Below are positions 6,639 through 60,511 of a DNA stretch of 64,000 bases, in pieces; position 1 is the stretch's first letter, and each line of letters begins with the position of its first letter. Source of the DNA: Vitrella brassicaformis CCMP3155 (Eukaryota; Protista; Chromerida). The notes under the pieces were generated by a model. It worked only from the letters and a program-made list of their open reading frames with translations. It made no database searches and was not told where the DNA came from. The stretch lies in assembly GCA_001179505.1 (NCBI GenBank), contig CDMY01000061.1, positions 62,001 through 126,000 on the forward strand, written 5' to 3'. Position numbers and translations under genes: made by a program.

Positions 6639-6790
6639 TAGCGCGAAACTTTCTTGCGAACCGCCGCTGCGAATCAGCAACACACACTTCTTCAACCATG
6701 TGCGCAGCAGCAGCGGTTTCAGAGAGCACCCTGAGGGCCTGAGGGGGGCGAGCTCGCGCGCGTCTCGCCCTCACCCAAGCGGAAACAACG

Positions 6791-14459: not shown

Positions 14460-14719
14460 GGAGCCGCAACCACTGACGCTGAATGAATGAACCAATGGCC
14501 GGATGGATCAAGGCAGCGAGTGCAGCGAGTGCTTCTAGTGCCTTCTCTCAGCGGTTTCTTGCCGGTCTTTGTGTTTCTTCAAGTAGTCATCTAAGCCTGT
14601 TGCTCAACACACACGCCCAGCGAGAAGGCTCCAAGATCTCCAAGCTCGCAGAGACCGCCTAGGGTGCTCCATGAAAGCGCTGCCGCCGCAGGGCCTGAAA
14701 CCAACGAGAGGGGAACTGA

Positions 14720-24330: not shown

Positions 24331-24759
24331 ACAGACGTCTCGACAGGAGGACGGAGGGACGGACTGACAGACGGCAGCCTGGCTACCTACCCTACCTACC
24401 TATTGGTTTAGTTCTGCGGGTGGCTGGCCGGCTGGATGGATGGATGGATGGATGGCTGTTTGTGTGTAGAGTAGCAATCAATGAGAGATGGATATGGATG
24501 GGACGAGATGAGAAGACGTGATGATGAGATTTATGACAGACAGATGAGATGAGATGACAGACGAGTAACGTAACAATGCTGCTGCTCATGCAACACACAA
24601 CGTGACCCCGCCATTGATCCTGAAGAACAAGCGTTGGCAACCCGCTAAGCTCGCAGTCTCAAGAGGGCCTCCCGATCTGGTGCAGCAGGGCTCATGAGCT
24701 AGGTGTAGTGTGCCCATCCCCCAGCCATCCATTCATCCATCCATCTATCTCCAGCCATC

Positions 24760-45432: not shown

Positions 45433-45993
45433 TCATAGCCTCTCTTCCTTCATTCCCTCGTCAGCTGCTTTGACCGTCTCCTCTTCCCCACCTCCCTCCA
45501 CACCTCCCAGCACACATCTTGCGTCGTCGACGGCACCCTTAAGCCTGTCGACCAGGGCCCTCTTGTACTCCACCTCCCGCCTCAGTGTCCGCACCACCTC
45601 CTCACACACCATGGCACGCTGCAGCCGACTCGTGGCGCTCGCCAGGTTCTGCAGGATGCGAAACACGTTGTCGAACCGGGCGTTGTGGCGCCCCTTGCCC
45701 TCCACCAGGGCGTCGAGCATCGCCCGGATCTCGTCGGGCAGCATGTCTACCAGCCGCCTCATCTCCTCACGCAGATCTGCGTCGGGGGCGTCGCTGAGCA
45801 TGTTGGTGACACTGTCGAGTGGCGGTGGAGGCGAGAAAGTGGTGGTGAAGACTTGCCCGAAGGCCCAGAAGGGGTCCACAGATGCCGGCGGCGGGAGGGC
45901 ATCGATGCTGCTGTGAAAGATCTTGTAGTGGATGGGAGGCGGCGGATACGCGTCCGCATAAAGCGGCTCACCGTGCGTATGGCTGTCCTCCAT
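45433..45993 (-). CDS. MED7: Mediator of RNA polymerase II transcription subunit 7 (single exon)
   Basis: YPPPPIHYKIF...LPPP...FWAFGQVF...DLREEMRRLV...MLDALV...FDNVFRILQNLASATSRLQRAMVCEEVVRTLRREVEYKRALVDRL follows the Med7 pattern (P-rich/YK start, FG, D.K.EL.KL, N.HHL.N..R..QA.E.L helix). Confidence 0.8.
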   Translation of the reverse strand: MEDSHTHGEPLYADAYPPPPIHYKIFHSSIDALPPPASVDPFWAFGQVFTTTFSPPPPLDSVTNMLSDAPDADLREEMRRLVDMLPDEIRAMLDALVEGKGRHNARFDNVFRILQNLASATSRLQRAMVCEEVVRTLRREVEYKRALVDRLKGAVDDARCVLGGVEGGGEEETVKAADEGMKEERL

Positions 45994-46023
45994 CACCACC
46001 GCTCTGCGGCGAGCTCGCGATTC

Positions 46024-46042
46024 CGTGAAACCGCTCTCTCAG
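46024..46042 (+). promoter_or_regulatory. Copy of shared promoter element (CGTGAAACCGCTCTCTCAG)
   Basis: 19-bp exact match to the reverse complement of 60346-60364 and 14-bp match to 55938-55951; 31 bp upstream of the MED7 ATG. Confidence 0.7.
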
Positions 46043-46171
46043 CCCTCAAGCTGCACGGTGTGTGTCGGTCGGTGAGCACATCGATCCCGTTACTGCTGAT
46101 CTGTATGTAGGATTGTCTTTGTGATTGCTGCAGCTGCCTTGTTTCGGCAATCGCTTCTACTTGGTGGTGCA

Positions 46172-46642
46172 ATGGCGGTGCTCAGCTCCCGGGGTGGAGA
46201 GGTCGACCTGATCTTCGATGACGGCACTCACGACGAGACTAAGGCCCTCACGAGCGGCATCGTGCGGGGGGAGATGAGTGCTGAGAAGGCCTCACGGCTC
46301 ATCGACACTGGAGCAGACGCCCCAGCCACTGTCACATTGGGAGGAGGGGGCATGCAAGGGAAACGGAGCTTGTTGGAGCTGGCCTTCTTCTACCTCGTGT
46401 GCATCTGCAGCGAGTGCCGCGCGGTCCTGCGCATTCTGGTGGCTGCCGGCGCCAAGATGATCCAGCGCTCACCCGGATGCTCTCTCTCTCCCGGATGCGC
46501 CTGCCGAGCTGCTGGTGTCTCACTGAAGAGCCTGAAGGAGCGAAGAAGGCCGGCGCGGCCGTTGAGCTCTTGTGTACATGTTGCACAGACATGTACACAT
46601 ACAGACGGGACTCACTGTGAACGATTATCCGCTGCTGAGTGA
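46172..46642 (+). pseudogene. Truncated copy of the divergent ankyrin-like module also found twice in the 51466 gene (fragment or short gene)
   Basis: LIFDDGTHDETKALTSGIVRG...RLIDTGADA...SLLELA...VLRILVAAGAK aligns by eye with LVFPEGTSGITRQLA...RLIDQGAD and VTLPDGSSPQTKRLAVGLSNG...KLIGQGADA...SLISLA...VLSVLVKHGADI. Similarity is lost after about 46460. Confidence 0.5.
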
Positions 46643-46704
46643 GTGTCTCTCTCGCTCCCGTTGTTGTTTGAGTGTCTTTCTCTCTCGCGTTGCCTGAGTC
46701 AGTC

Positions 46705-47938
46705 ATGCCGGCGTTGTCCGTCTGCTGTGTGCCCGGCTGTGTCCGGAAGGCCGGCACCAAAGAGGGCTGTGGCAACAAGTGCGTCAATCATGCCTTCCCC
46801 TGCAAGACGCACGGCTGCACCAATGCCCGCAGTAAGGACGGCCTCTGCAAGCGGTGCAACGCGCGGCTCCGTGACAAGAAGGAGGCGGGCCGACCCAAGC
46901 ACCATGACCGCAGCACCGGTAAGCTTCTCACGAGTGAGGGAAGACTCGAGAGTGAGACACGAGAGTGAGACACGAGCGACAATCACGCCTTTTTTGTGTC
47001 TCTGTTTGGACAGACGATTTCTTTCTCGAAGCAAATCGTGCGGCCGTGGTGGAGCGTGCCAACCAGGCACTCGGCCATGCCGCACGCGGCCACGAGCTCA
47101 AGCACTACGCAAGTGAGCTGATCAGCGCATGTCGGTCACTGTTTGTGTCTCACTGTGTGTGTGCAGACATCATGCGTCGAGAGATGGGAGAGGCGAACCC
47201 TCGCGACATCAAGATCTACCAGAAGCAAGTAACTGAATGACCGCAGCTGAATTGAGTTACCGCTTGTGGATGCTGTCTCAGTCAGCAGCCGTGTCGATGG
47301 CCATTGCCCGCAGCAAGGCCGACTATCGCGCCGCACACAAGGAACAAGGCATCAAGGGGATCATCCAGGGCGAGAAGGTCGGATACACTCTGGGCCTGCG
47401 CGTGTGTGTCTGTGCGTATGTCTGTCTGTCTGCGTATCTCTGTCTGTGTCTGTCGCTGCAGAAGTGTCGAGAGTGTGGGATGAAGGTGTGCATCTGCGGC
47501 GAGGATGTCCAACAGGCCAGGCGTACCGAGAAGGTCAGATGATCACATATTTCCTCACACAGACGCCTTGACACCTATTTGATGGGTGTGATTCAGCGTT
47601 CCATCGAGTGCATCACGATTGATGACGAGGACCCTCCCGCCAAAGCCCCCAACGTCGGCAAGGAGGTCACACACACACACCTCTATATACGTCTGACATC
47701 ATGCCTATATATGCGTGCGACACGTGTGTGTTGTTGTGTGGGCGTTGCAGCCTTCCATCTGCTACGTGTATCGTTCCATCTGCTGCAAGTGCAAGACTAC
47801 AACCAGCCGACCCGACAAGGTGGTCACACAACACGCACCTATATATCTGTGTGTGCGTGTTGTGTGTGTGATGTGTGCGACTGGATGCAGTGTTGCCCGA
47901 TTTGTCTCGAGTATCCCTGCACCTGTGATGCCGAATAG
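46705..47938 (+). CDS. Small Cys-rich putative zinc-binding protein, 8 exons
   Basis: N-terminal CCVPGC...CVNH..PCKTHGC....KDGLCKRC (Cx4C...CxxH-type repeats). C-terminal exons KCRECGMKVCIC, ICYVYRSICCKC and CCPICLEYPCTC are each on a phase-0 exon. Stop TAG at 47938. Confidence 0.65.
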
Positions 47939-48223
47939 CCCCACAAACGATACACACCCAACCCTCATCGACGTGGTACGACACCCCCCCCCCATCACCT
48001 CACACAGTGTGACACGTGTGTGATGTGGTGTGTGACTGGATGCAGTGTCGCTCGATGACAGAACGCACTGCATCTTGATCCCACCAAGTCGAGAGATGAT
48101 CAGGCAGTCACACACATGCAGACACCGCAACGAGTACATGTACATGAATACCTGACAGAATGAACCAATGCAGAGAGCTGATTGAGTGGTATAATCGCAG
48201 AGACAGCAAGTCAGAGGCAGTAG

Positions 48224-48405
48224 CAGACACGTGAACGGATGGACCGCAGCTAAGCAAATCGTATAAATGGTCAGCGAGTCAGAGAGAGACGCGCGGCTGT
48301 ATGAGAAAATTCGTGCCTTCGGGTCAGCACGCTCACCTCAGACACGTGAATGGATGGACCGCAGCTAAGCAAATCGTATAAATGGTCAGCGAGTCAGAGA
48401 GACGC
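48224..48405. repeat. ~67-bp direct repeat with 115-bp period (48224-48291, 48339-48405) plus a partial third copy
   Basis: CAGACACGTGAA(C/T)GGATGGACCGCAGCTAAGCAAATCGTATAAATGGTCAGCGAGTCAGAGAGA(GA)CGC occurs twice between convergent 3' ends. Confidence 0.93.
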
Positions 48406-55814: not shown

Positions 55815-55925
55815 CTGGCAGCCCGGGCTTGTCGTTTTCAGAAAAAAGAGGAGACCGTCAGAGCTCTGGGAGATTCCTGTTGCGTGTTGTTCGTTTGATT
55901 CTGCGTGCAGGAAACTGGACCAGGC

Positions 55926-55951
55926 TTTAGGACATTGCGTGAAACCGCTCT
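55926..55951 (+). promoter_or_regulatory. Copy of shared promoter element (TTTAGGACATTGCGTGAAACCGCTCT)
   Basis: 26-bp exact match to the reverse complement of 60351-60376; lies between divergent ATGs 55814 and 56088. Confidence 0.75.
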
Positions 55952-56087
55952 GCCAGAGCGCTGGAGCTCGCAGGCGACTTTGCCTCGAACCGCTTCAAAC
56001 GTTTCGTCCGCGAGAAGTTTGAAGATCTCAGCCGATCGCAGCTTTCTGGACGAATAGACAGCGTCTGAAGCAGGGTTTCCTTTCACC

Positions 56088-57120
56088 ATGCCGGCCACTG
56101 TGAGCCGGGTGCGGATGCCTGCGGACAACAGGTACCACGAGGGAGGGCGACCAAACGGGCACAGACACACCTGGGCGTCGTCCATGCCCCTGTGGACGTC
56201 GTCCGCTACTTGCTGAACGTCTGTGTCGTATCGGTGTTTTGTTGTCTGTCTTCAGGCTAAGCGTGTCGGATTCGCTCAAGACAACACCAATCTGGGTGAG
56301 GAGAGGCACGCAGAGGGCGCACGAGGACACCCAAGTGACGTCTTTGCCTCCGTGTGTGTGTGTGTGTGATGGTAGCAAATAATTGGTCACGTCCCGTATG
56401 AGCCGGAAGACCAGAAGAAGGAAGTGGAGGACGAGGCCGCCATCAGTGAGAAGGCCAAGGGCCTCTTCGCCCTCGCTCGACTCACCGGCAACTCCAGCAG
56501 CGTCACACCTGGCGCATGTCGCAAAATGCAGACAGCGTACGCAGACAGACGCCACTCTCACACAGATGCCCGTCCTTTCCAACACGTGTCGTCGTATCGT
56601 GTCCCTGCAGTTGGTCATTTGGCGCATCAGTGCCGCAACCTGGTGGCGTTGAAGCAGAGCGGTGCGGAGGATAAGGCCAAGAAGTCGTCCAGCCCCGCCG
56701 AGAGGGTGGCCTCGGATGACGAGGACGAGGAGGAAGTGGTAATTAAGAGAGCCGATTAATGACCAACCGATGCACCCACCAGTGTGTGCTGAACTCGTGT
56801 GTCTGTGTGTGTCTGTGTGTTGTTGTTGTCTGTTGCGTGCAGGATGACGTCCGCAGTGAGTCCGGCAGCTCGTCCTCTTCCTCATCGGACAGCGAGGAGG
56901 GTAAGCCACATCACACAACACACACACGCACTCACGAGAGGAGGCGATATCCGGTGTCAACGTGTGTGTTGCTGTGTGTGTGTCTACCTGCCCACCATCA
57001 GAGCGTCGCCGCCGGAAGCGCAAGCGCGAGAAGAAGAAGAAGAAGAAGAAGCACAAGAAGTCGCGGAGCAAGGAGAAGCACAGGTCCAAGAAGCGGCGAT
57101 GCAGGGACGACTCGGGCTAG
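56088..57120 (+). CDS. CXIP4/SREK1IP1-like CCHC zinc-knuckle protein with Ser/Lys/Arg-rich tail (assembly carries an apparent +1 frameshift)
   Basis: MPATVSRVRMPADNR...IW|QIIGHVPY...GLFALARLTG...GAC...GHLAHQCRN matches plant CXIP4 as I recall it (MPATAGRVRMPANNR...GLLALARITG...C..CG..GHL..QCRN). RS/K-rich last exon; stop at 57120. Confidence 0.85.
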
Positions 57121-58414
57121 CCAGCCTATCGGATACCTCACTCAGGGGGTGTGGGAGTGGGGGTGTAGACAGACGGAACGGGAGAGACGGGCGGTGTATT
57201 TTTGCGCTCGTGCAGCCGTTGGTGTGTGTGCTGTTGAATGAATAATGAATGGAGTGGGATGGAGTGATTGCCTCATCTCATGGGTGGTGGGCTGGGCTGC
57301 CTTGCCTTCCTCGCCTTGCTTTGCTTGCTCTTTGCGTTTGCCTGTGTATCTGTGTCTGTGTCCGTGTCTGAGCATGCCTGATTGACTGTACAGAGACAAA
57401 GAGGTGAATCCCACATGTGTGTGTGTGCGTGTGCTGCGTGCACCCGCGGCCTGTCGATACTTCGTGGTGTGTGCCTGAGGGGACTTATGTATTTGCCAGA
57501 TGCACGTGAGTGGGTGAGCCTCGAAAGCAGTAATGTCGTCTTGCAGTGAGTAAGAACAACCTCACACGACCCCCCTTCCTTGACCCACTCCACTCCTCCT
57601 TTCTCGCCCCACTGCCTACTGATTCAGTTGCAAGATCGCCATACAGACCGACACCACAGAGGGGCTGGCAGACAGACAGACAGACAGACCGATAGGCAGG
57701 CAGACCGATAGGCAGGCAGGCAGACACACGGCACAGATGTGTGGCGAGTCCCAACTGGTGCCCACTCAAAAAAATCACTCACGCCCCTCTCCCCTCTCCC
57801 CCCTCCGCCTCCCTCCCTCCCTCCCTCCACGAGTGAATTGCGAAGAAGAGAGCCTTGTATCATGATGATGGAAAAATGGGGCCGCCACACCACGTATGGT
57901 GTGCACACTCCCCGCTGCGATCACCACCTGACGGCCTCACTTCTTTCTTTCACCTGCCGCACCGCATATCAATTCAGTTCAATCAAGGAAGGAGGCCCAC
58001 ATTCATTCATTCATTGAGCGATATCGCCGGCCAGACACACATACACGTGCAAGCACGTATGTATACATGAAAAACTGTGTTGACGAACGAGCCAGCCAGC
58101 CAGCCAGCCAGCGAGAAAGATCTAGACTGTGGTACTCAGCGCGCCGCAAAAATGTACCACATGCACTACGCAGACACCCCACCCCACCCACCAGAGCACC
58201 CCACCCCACCACATCAGAAAAACGCAGCAGCATTACGTACGGATCGGGCATGACAGAAAAACCGCCGCCGTCCTCTCTCTTCTCTACCTCTCGTCTCGTA
58301 TGTATAGCGATGGTACCAACCAACTGATATGCACACTATGGACACACAATACGATAGATACGCCCTGTGTGGCGTATCGATCGATCGGGCTCTCTCCCTC
58401 TGTCTGCTGCCACG

Positions 58415-59030
58415 CTACCCACCCGCCCTGCGATTGTTGGGACCGGTGGTTTTGGCGTTGAACGCCTCGGCCTTCTGCACATCCTCGTTGTGCCCCAGCC
58501 ACTCCACGATGGCCTTGTTCACCTCGTCAGGACGCTGAACACACACCACAACACTCACACACAACAGATGTGATGTGGCATCCAGTGTGGCCTTATATCA
58601 TCCGGCGCGCCTTCACCTCACCTCGTCCATGGGGCAGTGTCCCGTTCCATCGAGCACTTGCAGCTCCACACGAGGGTTGTACCGTGGGAATGACGTCCCG
58701 GGATGCCGCCCACGGTCCAGCGGTGTCCACGGGTCGTCTCTGCCCCAAAGGGCCAGGATGGGCACGTCCAGGTCCTTGAGGACCTCCTCAGGCGTCGGGC
58801 CGGCCGGGCCTCGCAGGATGCGTAGGAAGACGCTGACGGCGTTCTCGTCGCGGGACGGGCCGAGGAGGGTCTCCATGAGCTCTGGTGTGACGGCCTCCTT
58901 GACGGCATACACCTGGCTGAGCGTTTGCTTGAGGTTCGTGGGGTCGCGGACCTGCACACACACACGGACGGTACACACGGACGGGAAGAGATGAGTGGAA
59001 TGGCACGTGATGTGTGGTGTGATGCATTCA

Positions 59031-59063
<33 letters not shown>

Positions 59064-60150
59064 GGTTGCCCTTCCTCCATCCCTCTCCCCAGCCCACCCG
59101 ATCGAATAGCCGTGGTCCCAGCCAGTCGCTGAATAGTATGTTCTGCACTAAGAACCACAGCGGCCGACCCCACAGTGGCAAATCCTCATAGCGCACTGTC
59201 GTCAGACCACCCGCACTGTTGAGCACTGCAGTTCACCCACACACACGATGGATGACAACACGTGGTGTGACACAGATGCATAGGCACACCATGAGGAGCA
59301 TAGCACACGCGTGTGAGCTCACGTACATATGACGGCAGCGCAGTCGTCCTTGAGTGTCTGGGCGGTCATCATTGAGATGAGGCCGCCGATGGAGTTGCCG
59401 CCGACAACCCACTTCTCGCCCGGGAAGCGGCTCTTGTCCCGTATGAAGTCCACCAGCAGCTCAGAGAAGAGCTCCAGCGTGTAGCTCAGCGACGGCTTGT
59501 CAGACGCACCAAAGCCTGATGGATGGCACACACACCACCACACACAGCACACCAACCATACACGGACACAGCTCCTGGATGGTGCAGTGCAGTGCTGTGG
59601 TGTGCTGACCGAGTAGGTCGATGGCATACACCCGATAGCCCGCCGCAGCGAGGGCATCGATGTTGTAGAGAAAGTGGTTGACATTGGCGCCAAACCCATG
59701 GATCAGCAGGAGGGGCGTCCCCCTGTCGTCCCCCTCCACCCTGTAATTCACCTTGTAGTCACGCCACCGCCATGCATGGTACTTGCGCTGCGGGAAGGAC
59801 GCCGGGTCCTCTGACAGGTTCTTCTCTCGCCGCGGCAAGAAGACCGTCTGGCCTTTCACTCGCGCCTCCACGCCGCTGGTGAGTGCCGGAGTGACGGCTG
59901 CGAGGGGGATAGAGCTGGTCTTGGACGTCATGTACGGCCGCACCAGGACGGTCTCGTGGTGTGGCGGGGCGGCCAGGTCGATGTGTGAATGCGATCTGAG
60001 GACGAATGCGCTGGCGACGGTGTGGTGAAAGAGAGACGATAACAGGGGGGACGAGTCCTTGAGGGTGGGGACGAGAAGCAGCGTGCAGATGAGGGGGAGA
60101 GCTACGGAGGTGCAGACGAGCAGGTGGTGCAGGTGGCTGAAGCTCCGCAT
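58415..60150 (-). CDS. Plastid-targeted alpha/beta-hydrolase of the pheophytinase/cyanobacterial-type family
   Basis: Hydrophobic signal plus VASAFV motif; PLLLIHGFGAN...YAIDLL|GFGASDKP; nucleophile elbow GNSIGG; LNSAGG; LWGRDDPW (Asp); GHCPMDE|RPDEVN (His). Confidence 0.9.
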
Positions 60151-60345
60151 GGCCGAGAATGGGCTGTCAGGGGCACGTGGCACGTGATGCTGACAGGCAG
60201 CCCAATGCGATGAGACTCGCGAGAGGTCGGGGAGATGGTGCAGCCGGGAGGATGACTAAAATGCATAAAGCATTCAAACCGCCTCCAGTGCTGCCCTCAG
60301 CCCGTTGCAGCTCCCCCTGCTTCTTCCCCTTCCCGTCCTCATCGT

Positions 60346-60376
60346 CTGAGAGAGCGGTTTCACGCAATGTCCTAAA
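60346..60376 (-). promoter_or_regulatory. Copy of shared promoter element (reverse complement TTTAGGACATTGCGTGAAACCGCTCTCTCAG)
   Basis: Contains both the 26-bp match to 55926-55951 and the 19-bp match to 46024-46042; lies between divergent ATGs 60150 and 60512. Confidence 0.75.
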
Positions 60377-60511
60377 ATCTGCGATTTGGCTACACCTCGA
60401 GATCAGACGCTCTGGTCGCTTTCCGTTACGTCAACGTCAAAAGAAACGTAGCTCATCACTTCTGGCACGTACGTTGGCAACCCGTCTCATCCATTCATCT
60501 GCTTGACGCCA

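What the first reader, a model, noticed from the sequence alone, without database searches (positions are those of the whole stretch)
55926..60376. Long shared cis-element in several bidirectional promoters
Seen: TTTAGGACATTGCGTGAAACCGCTCT is identical over 26 bp at 55926-55951 (+) and 60351-60376 (-). CGTGAAACCGCTCTCTCAG is identical over 19 bp at 46024-46042 (+) and 60346-60364 (-). The core AGCGGTTTC recurs at 6712-6720 and 14550-14558, and with one mismatch (AGCTGTTTCA) at 1403-1412. Every copy I found lies in a short intergenic region between divergent start codons, in either orientation, and the flanking genes are unrelated (MED7, MIT, CXIP4, hydrolase, NAA60, F-box, Tubby, PP2A-A). Inference: an orientation-independent composite promoter element, longer than a typical single ApiAP2 site, or a domesticated mini-repeat defining housekeeping bidirectional promoters.
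Basis: partly seen in the sequence, partly recalled or inferred. Interest (0 to 1): 0.75.

Follow-up and report, generated by a model that had tools for sequence, protein, structure and literature searches.

The report
Retroposon tail seeded into promoter gaps
The shared 26-letter "promoter element" is the tail end of a small, apparently unlisted mobile-element family in the alga Vitrella brassicaformis. It has pasted hundreds of mostly truncated copies into the short gaps where neighbouring genes start, so the identity reflects copying, not an independently evolved control signal.

Summary
The genome is Vitrella brassicaformis CCMP3155. Genome-wide, the 13-mer CGTGAAACCGCTC occurs 200 times (reversed control 3) and the 20-mer with up to 2 mismatches 129 times (control 0).

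The motif is not a free-standing site. It is the 3' end of a roughly 133-nt dispersed element with at least 40 long copies, up to 100% identical. Of 43 copies scored with a sequence model, 41 end at the same 3' position, while their 5' starts run from position 1 to 109. Ten of 61 copies are flanked by direct repeats of 7-14 bp. There are no terminal inverted repeats and no tRNA or Rfam match. This fits a SINE-like retroposon made by target-primed reverse transcription with heavy 5' truncation.

Copies lie almost only in head-to-head 5' gaps, often a few bases from the abundant start-region motif AAGCTCGCA (3,799 copies, control 339) and in the same orientation.

The window holds three members: 55866-55954(+), 60348-60378(-) and 46019-46040(+). 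The weak "core" copies at 6712, 14550 and 1403 are not supported.

A regulatory role is possible but not shown. This scan had noted AGCTCGCA on other DNA, but not this element.

The parts
55866..55954 (+). 5'-truncated copy of the roughly 133-nt element (model positions 33-131) with a 10-nt internal deletion.
   Evidence: 75.2 bits, E 2e-22; this copy was one of the five sequences used to build the model. Alignments.
60348..60378 (-). 31-nt 3' fragment of the element (model positions 101-131).
   Evidence: 22.5 bits, E 5.9e-6. It shares the TTTAGGAC variant with the 55866 copy, so both belong to the same subfamily.
46019..46040 (+). 22-nt 3' fragment of the element (model positions 110-131), directly abutting a GAGCTCGCG motif.
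   Evidence: 10.1 bits, E 0.04.
46011..46019 (+). GAGCTCGCG, a variant of the abundant start-region motif (A/G)AGCTCGCA, immediately 5' of the 46019 copy and in the same orientation.
   Evidence: Sequence; genome-wide counts of AAGCTCGCA.
55965..55972 (+). AGCTCGCA motif 11 nt 3' of the 55866 copy, in the same orientation.
55859..55867 (+). CAGAGCTCT, matched 8/9 by CAGAGCGCT at 55955-55963. A possible decayed target-site duplication of the 55866 copy; not conclusive.
   Evidence: Read. The gapless repeat finder gave only imperfect pairs here.
6712..6782 (-). Marginal match to model positions 58-126: a possible decayed relic or chance.
   Evidence: 5.0 bits, E 1.6; sequence.
45436..45993 (-). 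Single-exon MED7 gene. Its start codon lies 26 nt from the 5' edge of the 46019 copy, and it is the antisense neighbour of that copy.
   Evidence: P0001, 186 aa, 100% identity, PF05983.
59503..60150 (-). First exon of an alpha/beta-hydrolase gene. It is the sense neighbour of the 60348 copy, with its ATG 198 nt downstream of the copy.
   Evidence: PF00561, E 4e-6; sequence.

Best explanation
The shared sequence is the 3'-terminal segment of a short non-autonomous retroposon of Vitrella brassicaformis. The element is SINE-like, about 133 nt long, and runs from CCTTGGGTTCC... to ...CGTGAAACCGCTCTCTC with a short variable CT tail.

New copies appear to be made by target-primed reverse transcription. 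A staggered break is made in the target, and cDNA synthesis starts at the RNA's 3' tail and usually aborts early. Most copies are therefore only 15-45-nt 3' fragments, all ending at the same place, and some are flanked by 7-14-bp target-site duplications.

Insertions occur, or survive, almost only in the coding-free head-to-head gaps that hold the promoters. They are often within a few bases of the abundant start-region motif AAGCTCGCA and in its orientation.

What is shown: the repeat family, its nested 3'-anchored structure, the duplications and the positional bias. What is inferred: the RNA intermediate, the enzyme source, and whether the position comes from targeting or from selection. Any promoter or 5'UTR function of the inserted tail is secondary and unproven.
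For: Abundance and specificity:
- 13-mer: 200 exact copies against 3 for the reversed control.
- 20-mer with up to 2 mismatches: 129 against 0.

A longer element exists:
- The 130-nt query gave 40 scored hits out of 75 candidates, at 78-100% identity. Most reach query position 125-130, with starts at 1, 15, 18, 30, 45, 62 and 68.
- Three full copies have unrelated upstream flanks, which fixes the 5' boundary.

Nested set:
- With model R1, 41 of 43 hits in 66 loci end at model positions 127-132, while starts range from 1 to 109.
- In the window the three hits start at positions 33, 101 and 110 and all end at 131.

Direct repeats abutting the element ends:
- L012, 12/12.
- L035, 14/14, around a 17-nt insert.
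- L056, 11/11.
- L010, 10 exact.
- L015, 10/10, and L029, 13/13, around full-length copies.
- L023, L037, L039 and L069.
- The L029 junction 22-mer is unique in the genome, so its flanking repeat is target sequence, not element.

Other element types do not fit:
- No terminal inverted repeats.
- No tRNA and no Rfam family.

Subfamily linkage: in the and 20 rows, the G variant before CGTG almost always carries TTAGGAC upstream, while the C variant rarely does.

Divergence: the count of about 157 real one-mismatch copies against about 197 exact ones gives roughly 6% core divergence. That is like the long copies (mean about 94% identity), so the core shows no extra constraint.

Position: in the codon-score metagene of 66 copies, a coding-free zone spans about -250 to +100. 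Downstream coding is almost only on the sense strand and upstream coding almost only antisense.

Enzyme availability: reverse-transcriptase genes with long open frames exist in the genome, and Woo et al. 2015 list 632 kb of LINEs and no SINE in Vitrella.
Against: - Only 10 of 61 copies show a flanking repeat of 7 nt or more, and none of the three window copies has a clean one.
- No partner LINE sharing the 3' end was identified, and none of the listed reverse-transcriptase loci lies beside a listed copy.
- No internal Pol III promoter or structured RNA was found, so it fails the strict SINE definition.
- Copies were selected by exact match to the core, which biases any view of conservation.
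- The divergence comparison is rough.
- The AAGCTCGCA adjacency and spacing counts are my hand readings of printed rows. The script machine was lost before I could compute them.
Confidence: 0.7

Rival explanations
1. The core (ATTSCGTGAAACCGCTCTCTC) is a working cis-element, either a start-proximal promoter element or a 5'UTR element read by a protein. The mobile element is only the vehicle that spread it, and copies persist because they are useful (exaptation).
For: Copies are confined to promoter gaps and are co-oriented with AAGCTCGCA. ACATTCC resembles an initiator-type sequence (own knowledge, not tested). In two loci, copies sit as outward-facing pairs, each pointing at its own gene (L004 and L065). 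The sense strand of the 28-nt tail has no ATG while the antisense strand does (read).
Against: No binding factor, expression data or start-site data could be obtained. Core divergence of about 6% is no lower than that of the rest of the element. Retained lengths fall off smoothly from about 35 nt to 15 nt, rather than stopping at a motif edge.
Confidence: 0.2
2. The mechanism is the same, but the source is not a dedicated SINE. The short copies would be extreme 5'-truncated 3' ends of an autonomous LINE, or tailless retro-copies of an abundant cellular small RNA, and the roughly 133-nt form would be only one of several templates sharing the tail.
For: Most copies retain under 35 nt, which is too little to tell which template they came from. 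C-variant short copies rarely match the long form upstream of ATTCC. No Pol III head was found.
Against: Three full-length copies share one discrete 5' boundary, and several copies are 97-100% identical over all 130 nt, as expected of a unit-length element. No reverse-transcriptase locus was seen next to a listed copy. No Rfam family matched.
Confidence: 0.25
3. The copies spread at the DNA level, by a cut-and-paste miniature transposon, gene conversion or segmental duplication among promoters.
For: Local tandem and inverted duplicates of the tail exist (L058, L029, L040, L004 and L065). L009 and L033 share a 57-nt upstream module.
Against: There are no terminal inverted repeats. Duplication length varies from 7 to 14 bp. 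One end is constant and the other is graded. Flanks are unrelated in nearly all copies.
Confidence: 0.05

Closest known systems
SINEs and other non-autonomous non-LTR retroposons mobilised by LINE enzymes (target-primed reverse transcription)
   Same: Short unit length (about 133 nt). Hundreds of dispersed copies. A common 3' end with a short simple-repeat tail. 5' truncation. Target-site duplications of variable length. Young copies up to 100% identical.
   Different: No tRNA, 7SL or 5S-type head and no Pol III boxes were detected. No partner LINE was identified. Truncation is extreme, with most copies only 15-45 nt. Copies sit almost only in promoter gaps, not in introns.
Target-specific retroelements that seek safe havens in compact genomes. 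Examples are Dictyostelium TRE5/TRE3 near tRNA genes, yeast Ty3 at Pol III start sites, S. pombe Tf1 at Pol II promoters, and R2/NeSL/CRE-type site-specific LINEs (own knowledge).
   Same: A compact genome. Insertions concentrated at transcription start regions. A fixed orientation relative to a nearby sequence motif. In five duplication-bearing copies the upstream edge of the duplication lies 0-4 nt 3' of (A/G)AGCTCGCA.
   Different: Targeting as opposed to selective survival is not shown. The target would be a Pol II start-region motif present in thousands of copies. No endonuclease or tethering factor is known.
   Same: Location in short head-to-head 5' gaps, strand-specific placement, and high over-representation.
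   Different: Homology extends in a graded way up to about 133 nt. Copies carry insertion duplications and fall into subfamilies. AGCTCGCA itself is a separate and far more abundant word (3,799 copies) that lacks these properties.

Membership tests
SINE / non-autonomous non-LTR retroposon | Dispersed multi-copy element of discrete short length | tested here: met
   (at least 40 long copies out of 75 candidates). (three full copies with a common 5' boundary and unrelated flanks). (129-200 tail copies).
SINE / non-autonomous non-LTR retroposon | Common 3' end with 5' truncation series | tested here: met
   41 of 43 hits end at model positions 127-132, with starts from 1 to 109. One search shows the same for the three window copies.
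SINE / non-autonomous non-LTR retroposon | Target-site duplications of variable length | tested here: met
   10 of 61 copies have abutting direct repeats of 7-14 nt. The rest have none of 7 nt or more.
SINE / non-autonomous non-LTR retroposon | Internal Pol III promoter, or a head derived from tRNA, 7SL or 5S RNA | tested here: not met
   No Rfam match at E up to 1. No tRNA by ARAGORN. Fold z-score 0.27. For this reason I call it SINE-like only.
SINE / non-autonomous non-LTR retroposon | Partner LINE sharing the 3' tail | not tested
Miniature inverted-repeat / cut-and-paste DNA transposon | Terminal inverted repeats and fixed-length duplication | tested here: not met
   No inverted repeats of 8 nt or more in three full copies. 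Duplications range from 7 to 14 nt.
Transcription-factor site / core promoter element evolved in place | Similarity limited to the site, with independent flanks and no linkage between variable positions | tested here: not met
   Graded homology up to 133 nt. The G/C variant is linked to the upstream TTAGGAC. Insertion duplications are present.
Transcription-factor site / core promoter element evolved in place | Fixed position relative to mapped transcription start sites, and a binding factor | not testable with these tools
   No transcript 5' ends were obtainable. The only public contig found was genomic, and records of the own genome are withheld.
Site-specific (targeted) retroelement | Insertions at a defined distance and orientation from a target motif | tested here: inconclusive
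   About 26 of 70 copies have AGCTCGC within 45 nt upstream in the same orientation, against about 3 inverted. The duplication edge lies 0-4 nt 3' of the motif in L010, L012, L023, L037 and L056 (hand-read). No control for selection was possible.

The most novel reading that the evidence does not exclude
A non-LTR retroposon family aimed at the Pol II start-region motif AAGCTCGCA, with the first nick a few bases 3' of the motif and a fixed orientation. This would be a promoter-targeted safe-haven strategy in a free-living relative of apicomplexans. It would place the same 15-133-nt sequence at the very 5' end of hundreds of unrelated transcription units. That would let the element be co-transcribed from host promoters and could wire those genes to a common regulator.
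Probability: 0.3. Interest if true: 0.7.

Novelty: new variant of a known kind. Interest (0 to 1): 0.5.

Why it matters
- It replaces an attractive but wrong reading (a long new promoter code word) with a testable one: recent copying by a mobile element.
- It adds a SINE-like family to a genome whose published repeat table lists none.
- It shows that Vitrella's tiny head-to-head promoter gaps are the landing or survival zone for insertions.
- Because copies sit beside AAGCTCGCA, the family gives hundreds of natural insertions right next to that candidate start signal. These could be used to test how spacing and sequence there affect transcription.
- If targeting is real, it would be a new case of promoter-directed retroposition in alveolates.

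Tried and rejected
- First downstream ATG and ORF length, compared with random positions, did not discriminate.
- Transcript 5' ends could not be obtained. The look-up of a 707-aa ORF failed. The MED7 look-up returned a Logan contig that is plain genomic DNA identical to the window. The annotated tryptophanase-like protein P0002 is not on record elsewhere.
That step is left out.
- The Rfam, tRNA and RNA-fold tests of the long element were all negative.
- The metagenome scan gave one hit, which reads like a coding stretch from an unrelated, probably bacterial, contig. It lacks both the TTAGGAC prefix and the CT tail, so I take it as chance.
- Literature searches for the motif words and for Vitrella SINEs found nothing relevant.
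- I tested the idea that CTTAGGACATT is part of the long element's 5' end. The junction is unique to one locus, so the idea is rejected.
- Relict spliced-leader and snRNA-promoter ideas were dropped: the neighbouring genes are intron-rich, the downstream sequence is not conserved, and there is no Rfam match.
- Two limits applied. The script machine was lost, so later counts were made with the repeat and model tools or by hand.
Full report
**Observation.** The 26-mer occurs at 55926-55951(+) and 60351-60376(-) with no other match at up to 3 mismatches and none in shuffles. The 19-mer occurs at 46024-46042(+) and 60346-60364(-), and with 2 mismatches at 55938-55956(+). The 9-mer AGCGGTTTC occurs five times against 0.36 expected.

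**Organism.** The genome has 72,700,666 bases in 1,064 contigs. That is exactly the Vitrella brassicaformis assembly of Woo et al. 2015. A neighbouring protein is named as Vitrella brassicaformis CCMP3155.

**Genome-wide abundance.** ACATTGCGTGAAACCGCTCT with up to 2 mismatches has 129 copies, against 0 for the reversed control. CGTGAAACCGCTC has 200 exact copies against 3, and 527 against 173 at up to 1 mismatch. This is a real family, not a chance repeat in one window.

**What the copies look like.**
- Printing 70 copies in register shows a sharp common 3' end...CGTGAAACCGCTC followed by a short variable CT run.
- The 5' similarity is graded. Some copies match only from CGTG, many from ATTC, many from CTTAGGAC, some from CGTCAGGCC, and a few for more than 100 nt.
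- A 130-nt query from locus L029 finds 40 scored hits out of 75 candidates, at 78-100% identity. Most run to query position 125-130, with starts at 1, 15, 18, 30, 45, 62 and 68.
- Three full copies (L029, L033, L015) begin at the same CCTTGGGTTCC with unrelated sequence upstream, so the unit is about 133 nt.
- A sequence-only model of the unit was run over 66 loci. It gives 43 hits, of which 41 end at model positions 127-132, while starts range from 1 to 109.
- In the window it finds 55866-55954(+) at positions 33-131, 60348-60378(-) at 101-131 and 46019-46040(+) at 110-131. The 6712 site scores only E 1.6, and 14550 and 1403 are not found.
- Both 26-mer copies carry the same TTTAGGAC variant. 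In the longer copy this follows a 10-nt deletion relative to L033-type copies. Their identity therefore comes from one subfamily.

**Evidence for insertion.** The repeat finder reports direct repeats that abut the element's two ends in ten of 61 copies:

| Locus | Flanking repeat | Note |
|---|---|---|
| L012 | 12/12 | |
| L010 | 10 exact, within a 20-nt pair at 85% | |
| L023 | 12 nt at 92% | |
| L035 | 14/14 | around only 17 nt |
| L056 | 11/11 | |
| L037 | 7/7 | |
| L039 | 7/7 | |
| L069 | 15 nt at 87% | |
| L015 | 10/10 | full-length copy |
| L029 | 13/13 | full-length copy |

- The L029 repeat is target sequence rather than element, because the junction 22-mer is unique in the genome.
- Duplication length is variable, one end is constant and there are no terminal inverted repeats. 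This is the signature of target-primed reverse transcription with early abortion (established knowledge of non-LTR retroposition), and not of cut-and-paste elements.
- The base before CGTG co-varies with the upstream extension. G-variant copies almost always carry TTAGGAC and C-variant copies rarely do (my count). This is subfamily structure, expected from copying and not from independent motif evolution.
- From, about 197 real exact copies and about 157 real one-mismatch copies imply roughly 6% divergence in the core. That is like the long copies, so I see no extra constraint on the core. This estimate is rough.
- Most copies, including the three in the window, have no clean duplication. At 55859-55867 and 55955-55963 there is only an 8/9 match.

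**Where the copies sit.**
- I trained a codon log-odds score on long high-GC3 ORFs and averaged it over 66 copies.
- The result shows a coding-free zone from about -250 to +100. Downstream coding is almost only on the element's strand (up to 29% of loci per position, against 0-3% antisense). Upstream coding is almost only antisense (8-27%, against 0-6% sense).
- Essentially all copies are therefore in head-to-head 5' gaps, not in introns, tandem gaps or tail-to-tail gaps.
- One caution. In this window most promoter gaps appear to be head-to-head, and Woo et al. report an excess of head-to-head pairs. I therefore claim confinement to 5' gaps, not a preference for bidirectional over unidirectional promoters.

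**Link to AAGCTCGCA.**
- This separate word has 3,799 copies against 339 for the control.
- In my reading of the rows, AGCTCGC lies within 45 nt upstream of about 26 of 70 copies in the same orientation, and inverted in about 3. The gap ranges from 4 to 38 nt.
- In five duplication-bearing copies the upstream duplication starts 0-4 nt 3' of the motif (L010, L012, L023, L037, L056). In L015 the duplication overlaps the motif.
- The variable spacing is thus explained by duplication length plus retained element length.
- Other agents of this scan noted AGCTCGCA in 16 findings, and one states that it sits where mRNAs begin. I could not check that claim.
- Whether the adjacency reflects targeting or survival is open.

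**Negative results on the element's nature.** There is no Rfam match, no tRNA and no unusual RNA fold (z-score 0.27). Reverse-transcriptase genes with long open frames exist, and Woo et al. list 632 kb of LINEs and no SINE for Vitrella. No listed RT locus lies beside a listed copy, and I could not fetch their 3' ends.

**Function.** Nothing here shows that the tail regulates anything. Transcript ends were not obtainable. The neighbouring genes are unrelated: MED7, an alpha/beta hydrolase and a beta-eliminating lyase.

**Verdict.** The promoter-code interpretation is replaced by a SINE-like retroposon tail concentrated in promoter gaps beside AAGCTCGCA. The element is of a known kind but has unusual features: no Pol III head, a CT tail, extreme truncation and start-region placement. 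It is apparently unlisted for this genome.

Noticed in passing
genome-wide; window 55965-55972, 14643-14650, 24648-24655: AAGCTCGCA is strongly over-represented (3,799 copies against 339 for the reversed control). It often occurs in close pairs, including inward-facing palindromic pairs. For example, the reconstructed pre-insertion site in L037 reads AGCTCGCAATCTTTGCGAGCT.
   Followed up: partly
L009:300-370 and L033:2130-2200: Two loci on different contigs share a roughly 57-nt upstream module (CTACCCTAGCTCACAAGCTCGCAGTGGTTCGTCTTGCCAAGCTGGCAATCCTGACAG) but have different downstream flanks. This suggests further repeated modules in promoter gaps.
   Followed up: no
L035:1370-1430 and L045:1900-1960: Telomere-like words (TAGGGTTT and AAACCCTAA types) lie beside element copies. 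In L035 the 14-nt target-site duplication itself is GTCTAGGGTTTGGC.
   Followed up: no
L032:332-394: Three tandem 21-nt units (CGACATACGACATGTAACCCG-like) lie directly upstream of a diverged long copy.
   Followed up: no
L004:1460-1530, L065:1990-2100, L058:1990-2050, L029:1499-1690: Some gaps hold two copies: outward-facing inverted pairs (L004, L065) or tandem copies 28-159 nt apart (L058, L029). This indicates repeated hits on the same gap.
   Followed up: partly
window 45998-46005: ACCGCTCT, identical to the last 8 nt of the element core, lies 14 nt upstream of the 46019 copy on the other side of GAGCTCGCG. It could be an even shorter tail fragment or chance.
   Followed up: no
window 45860-48266 / L071: A public Logan contig (ERR558151_10097, 3,891 nt) matches the window without a mismatch or indel over the part aligned, introns included. 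That run is therefore genomic, not transcript, data.
   Followed up: yes
G000:C61:195298-196088 (about 70 kb beyond the window's end): A reverse-transcriptase match with one in-frame stop lies on the same contig as the window. Several other contigs carry RT open frames of 1,300-2,200 aa, which are candidates for the element's enzyme source.
   Followed up: no
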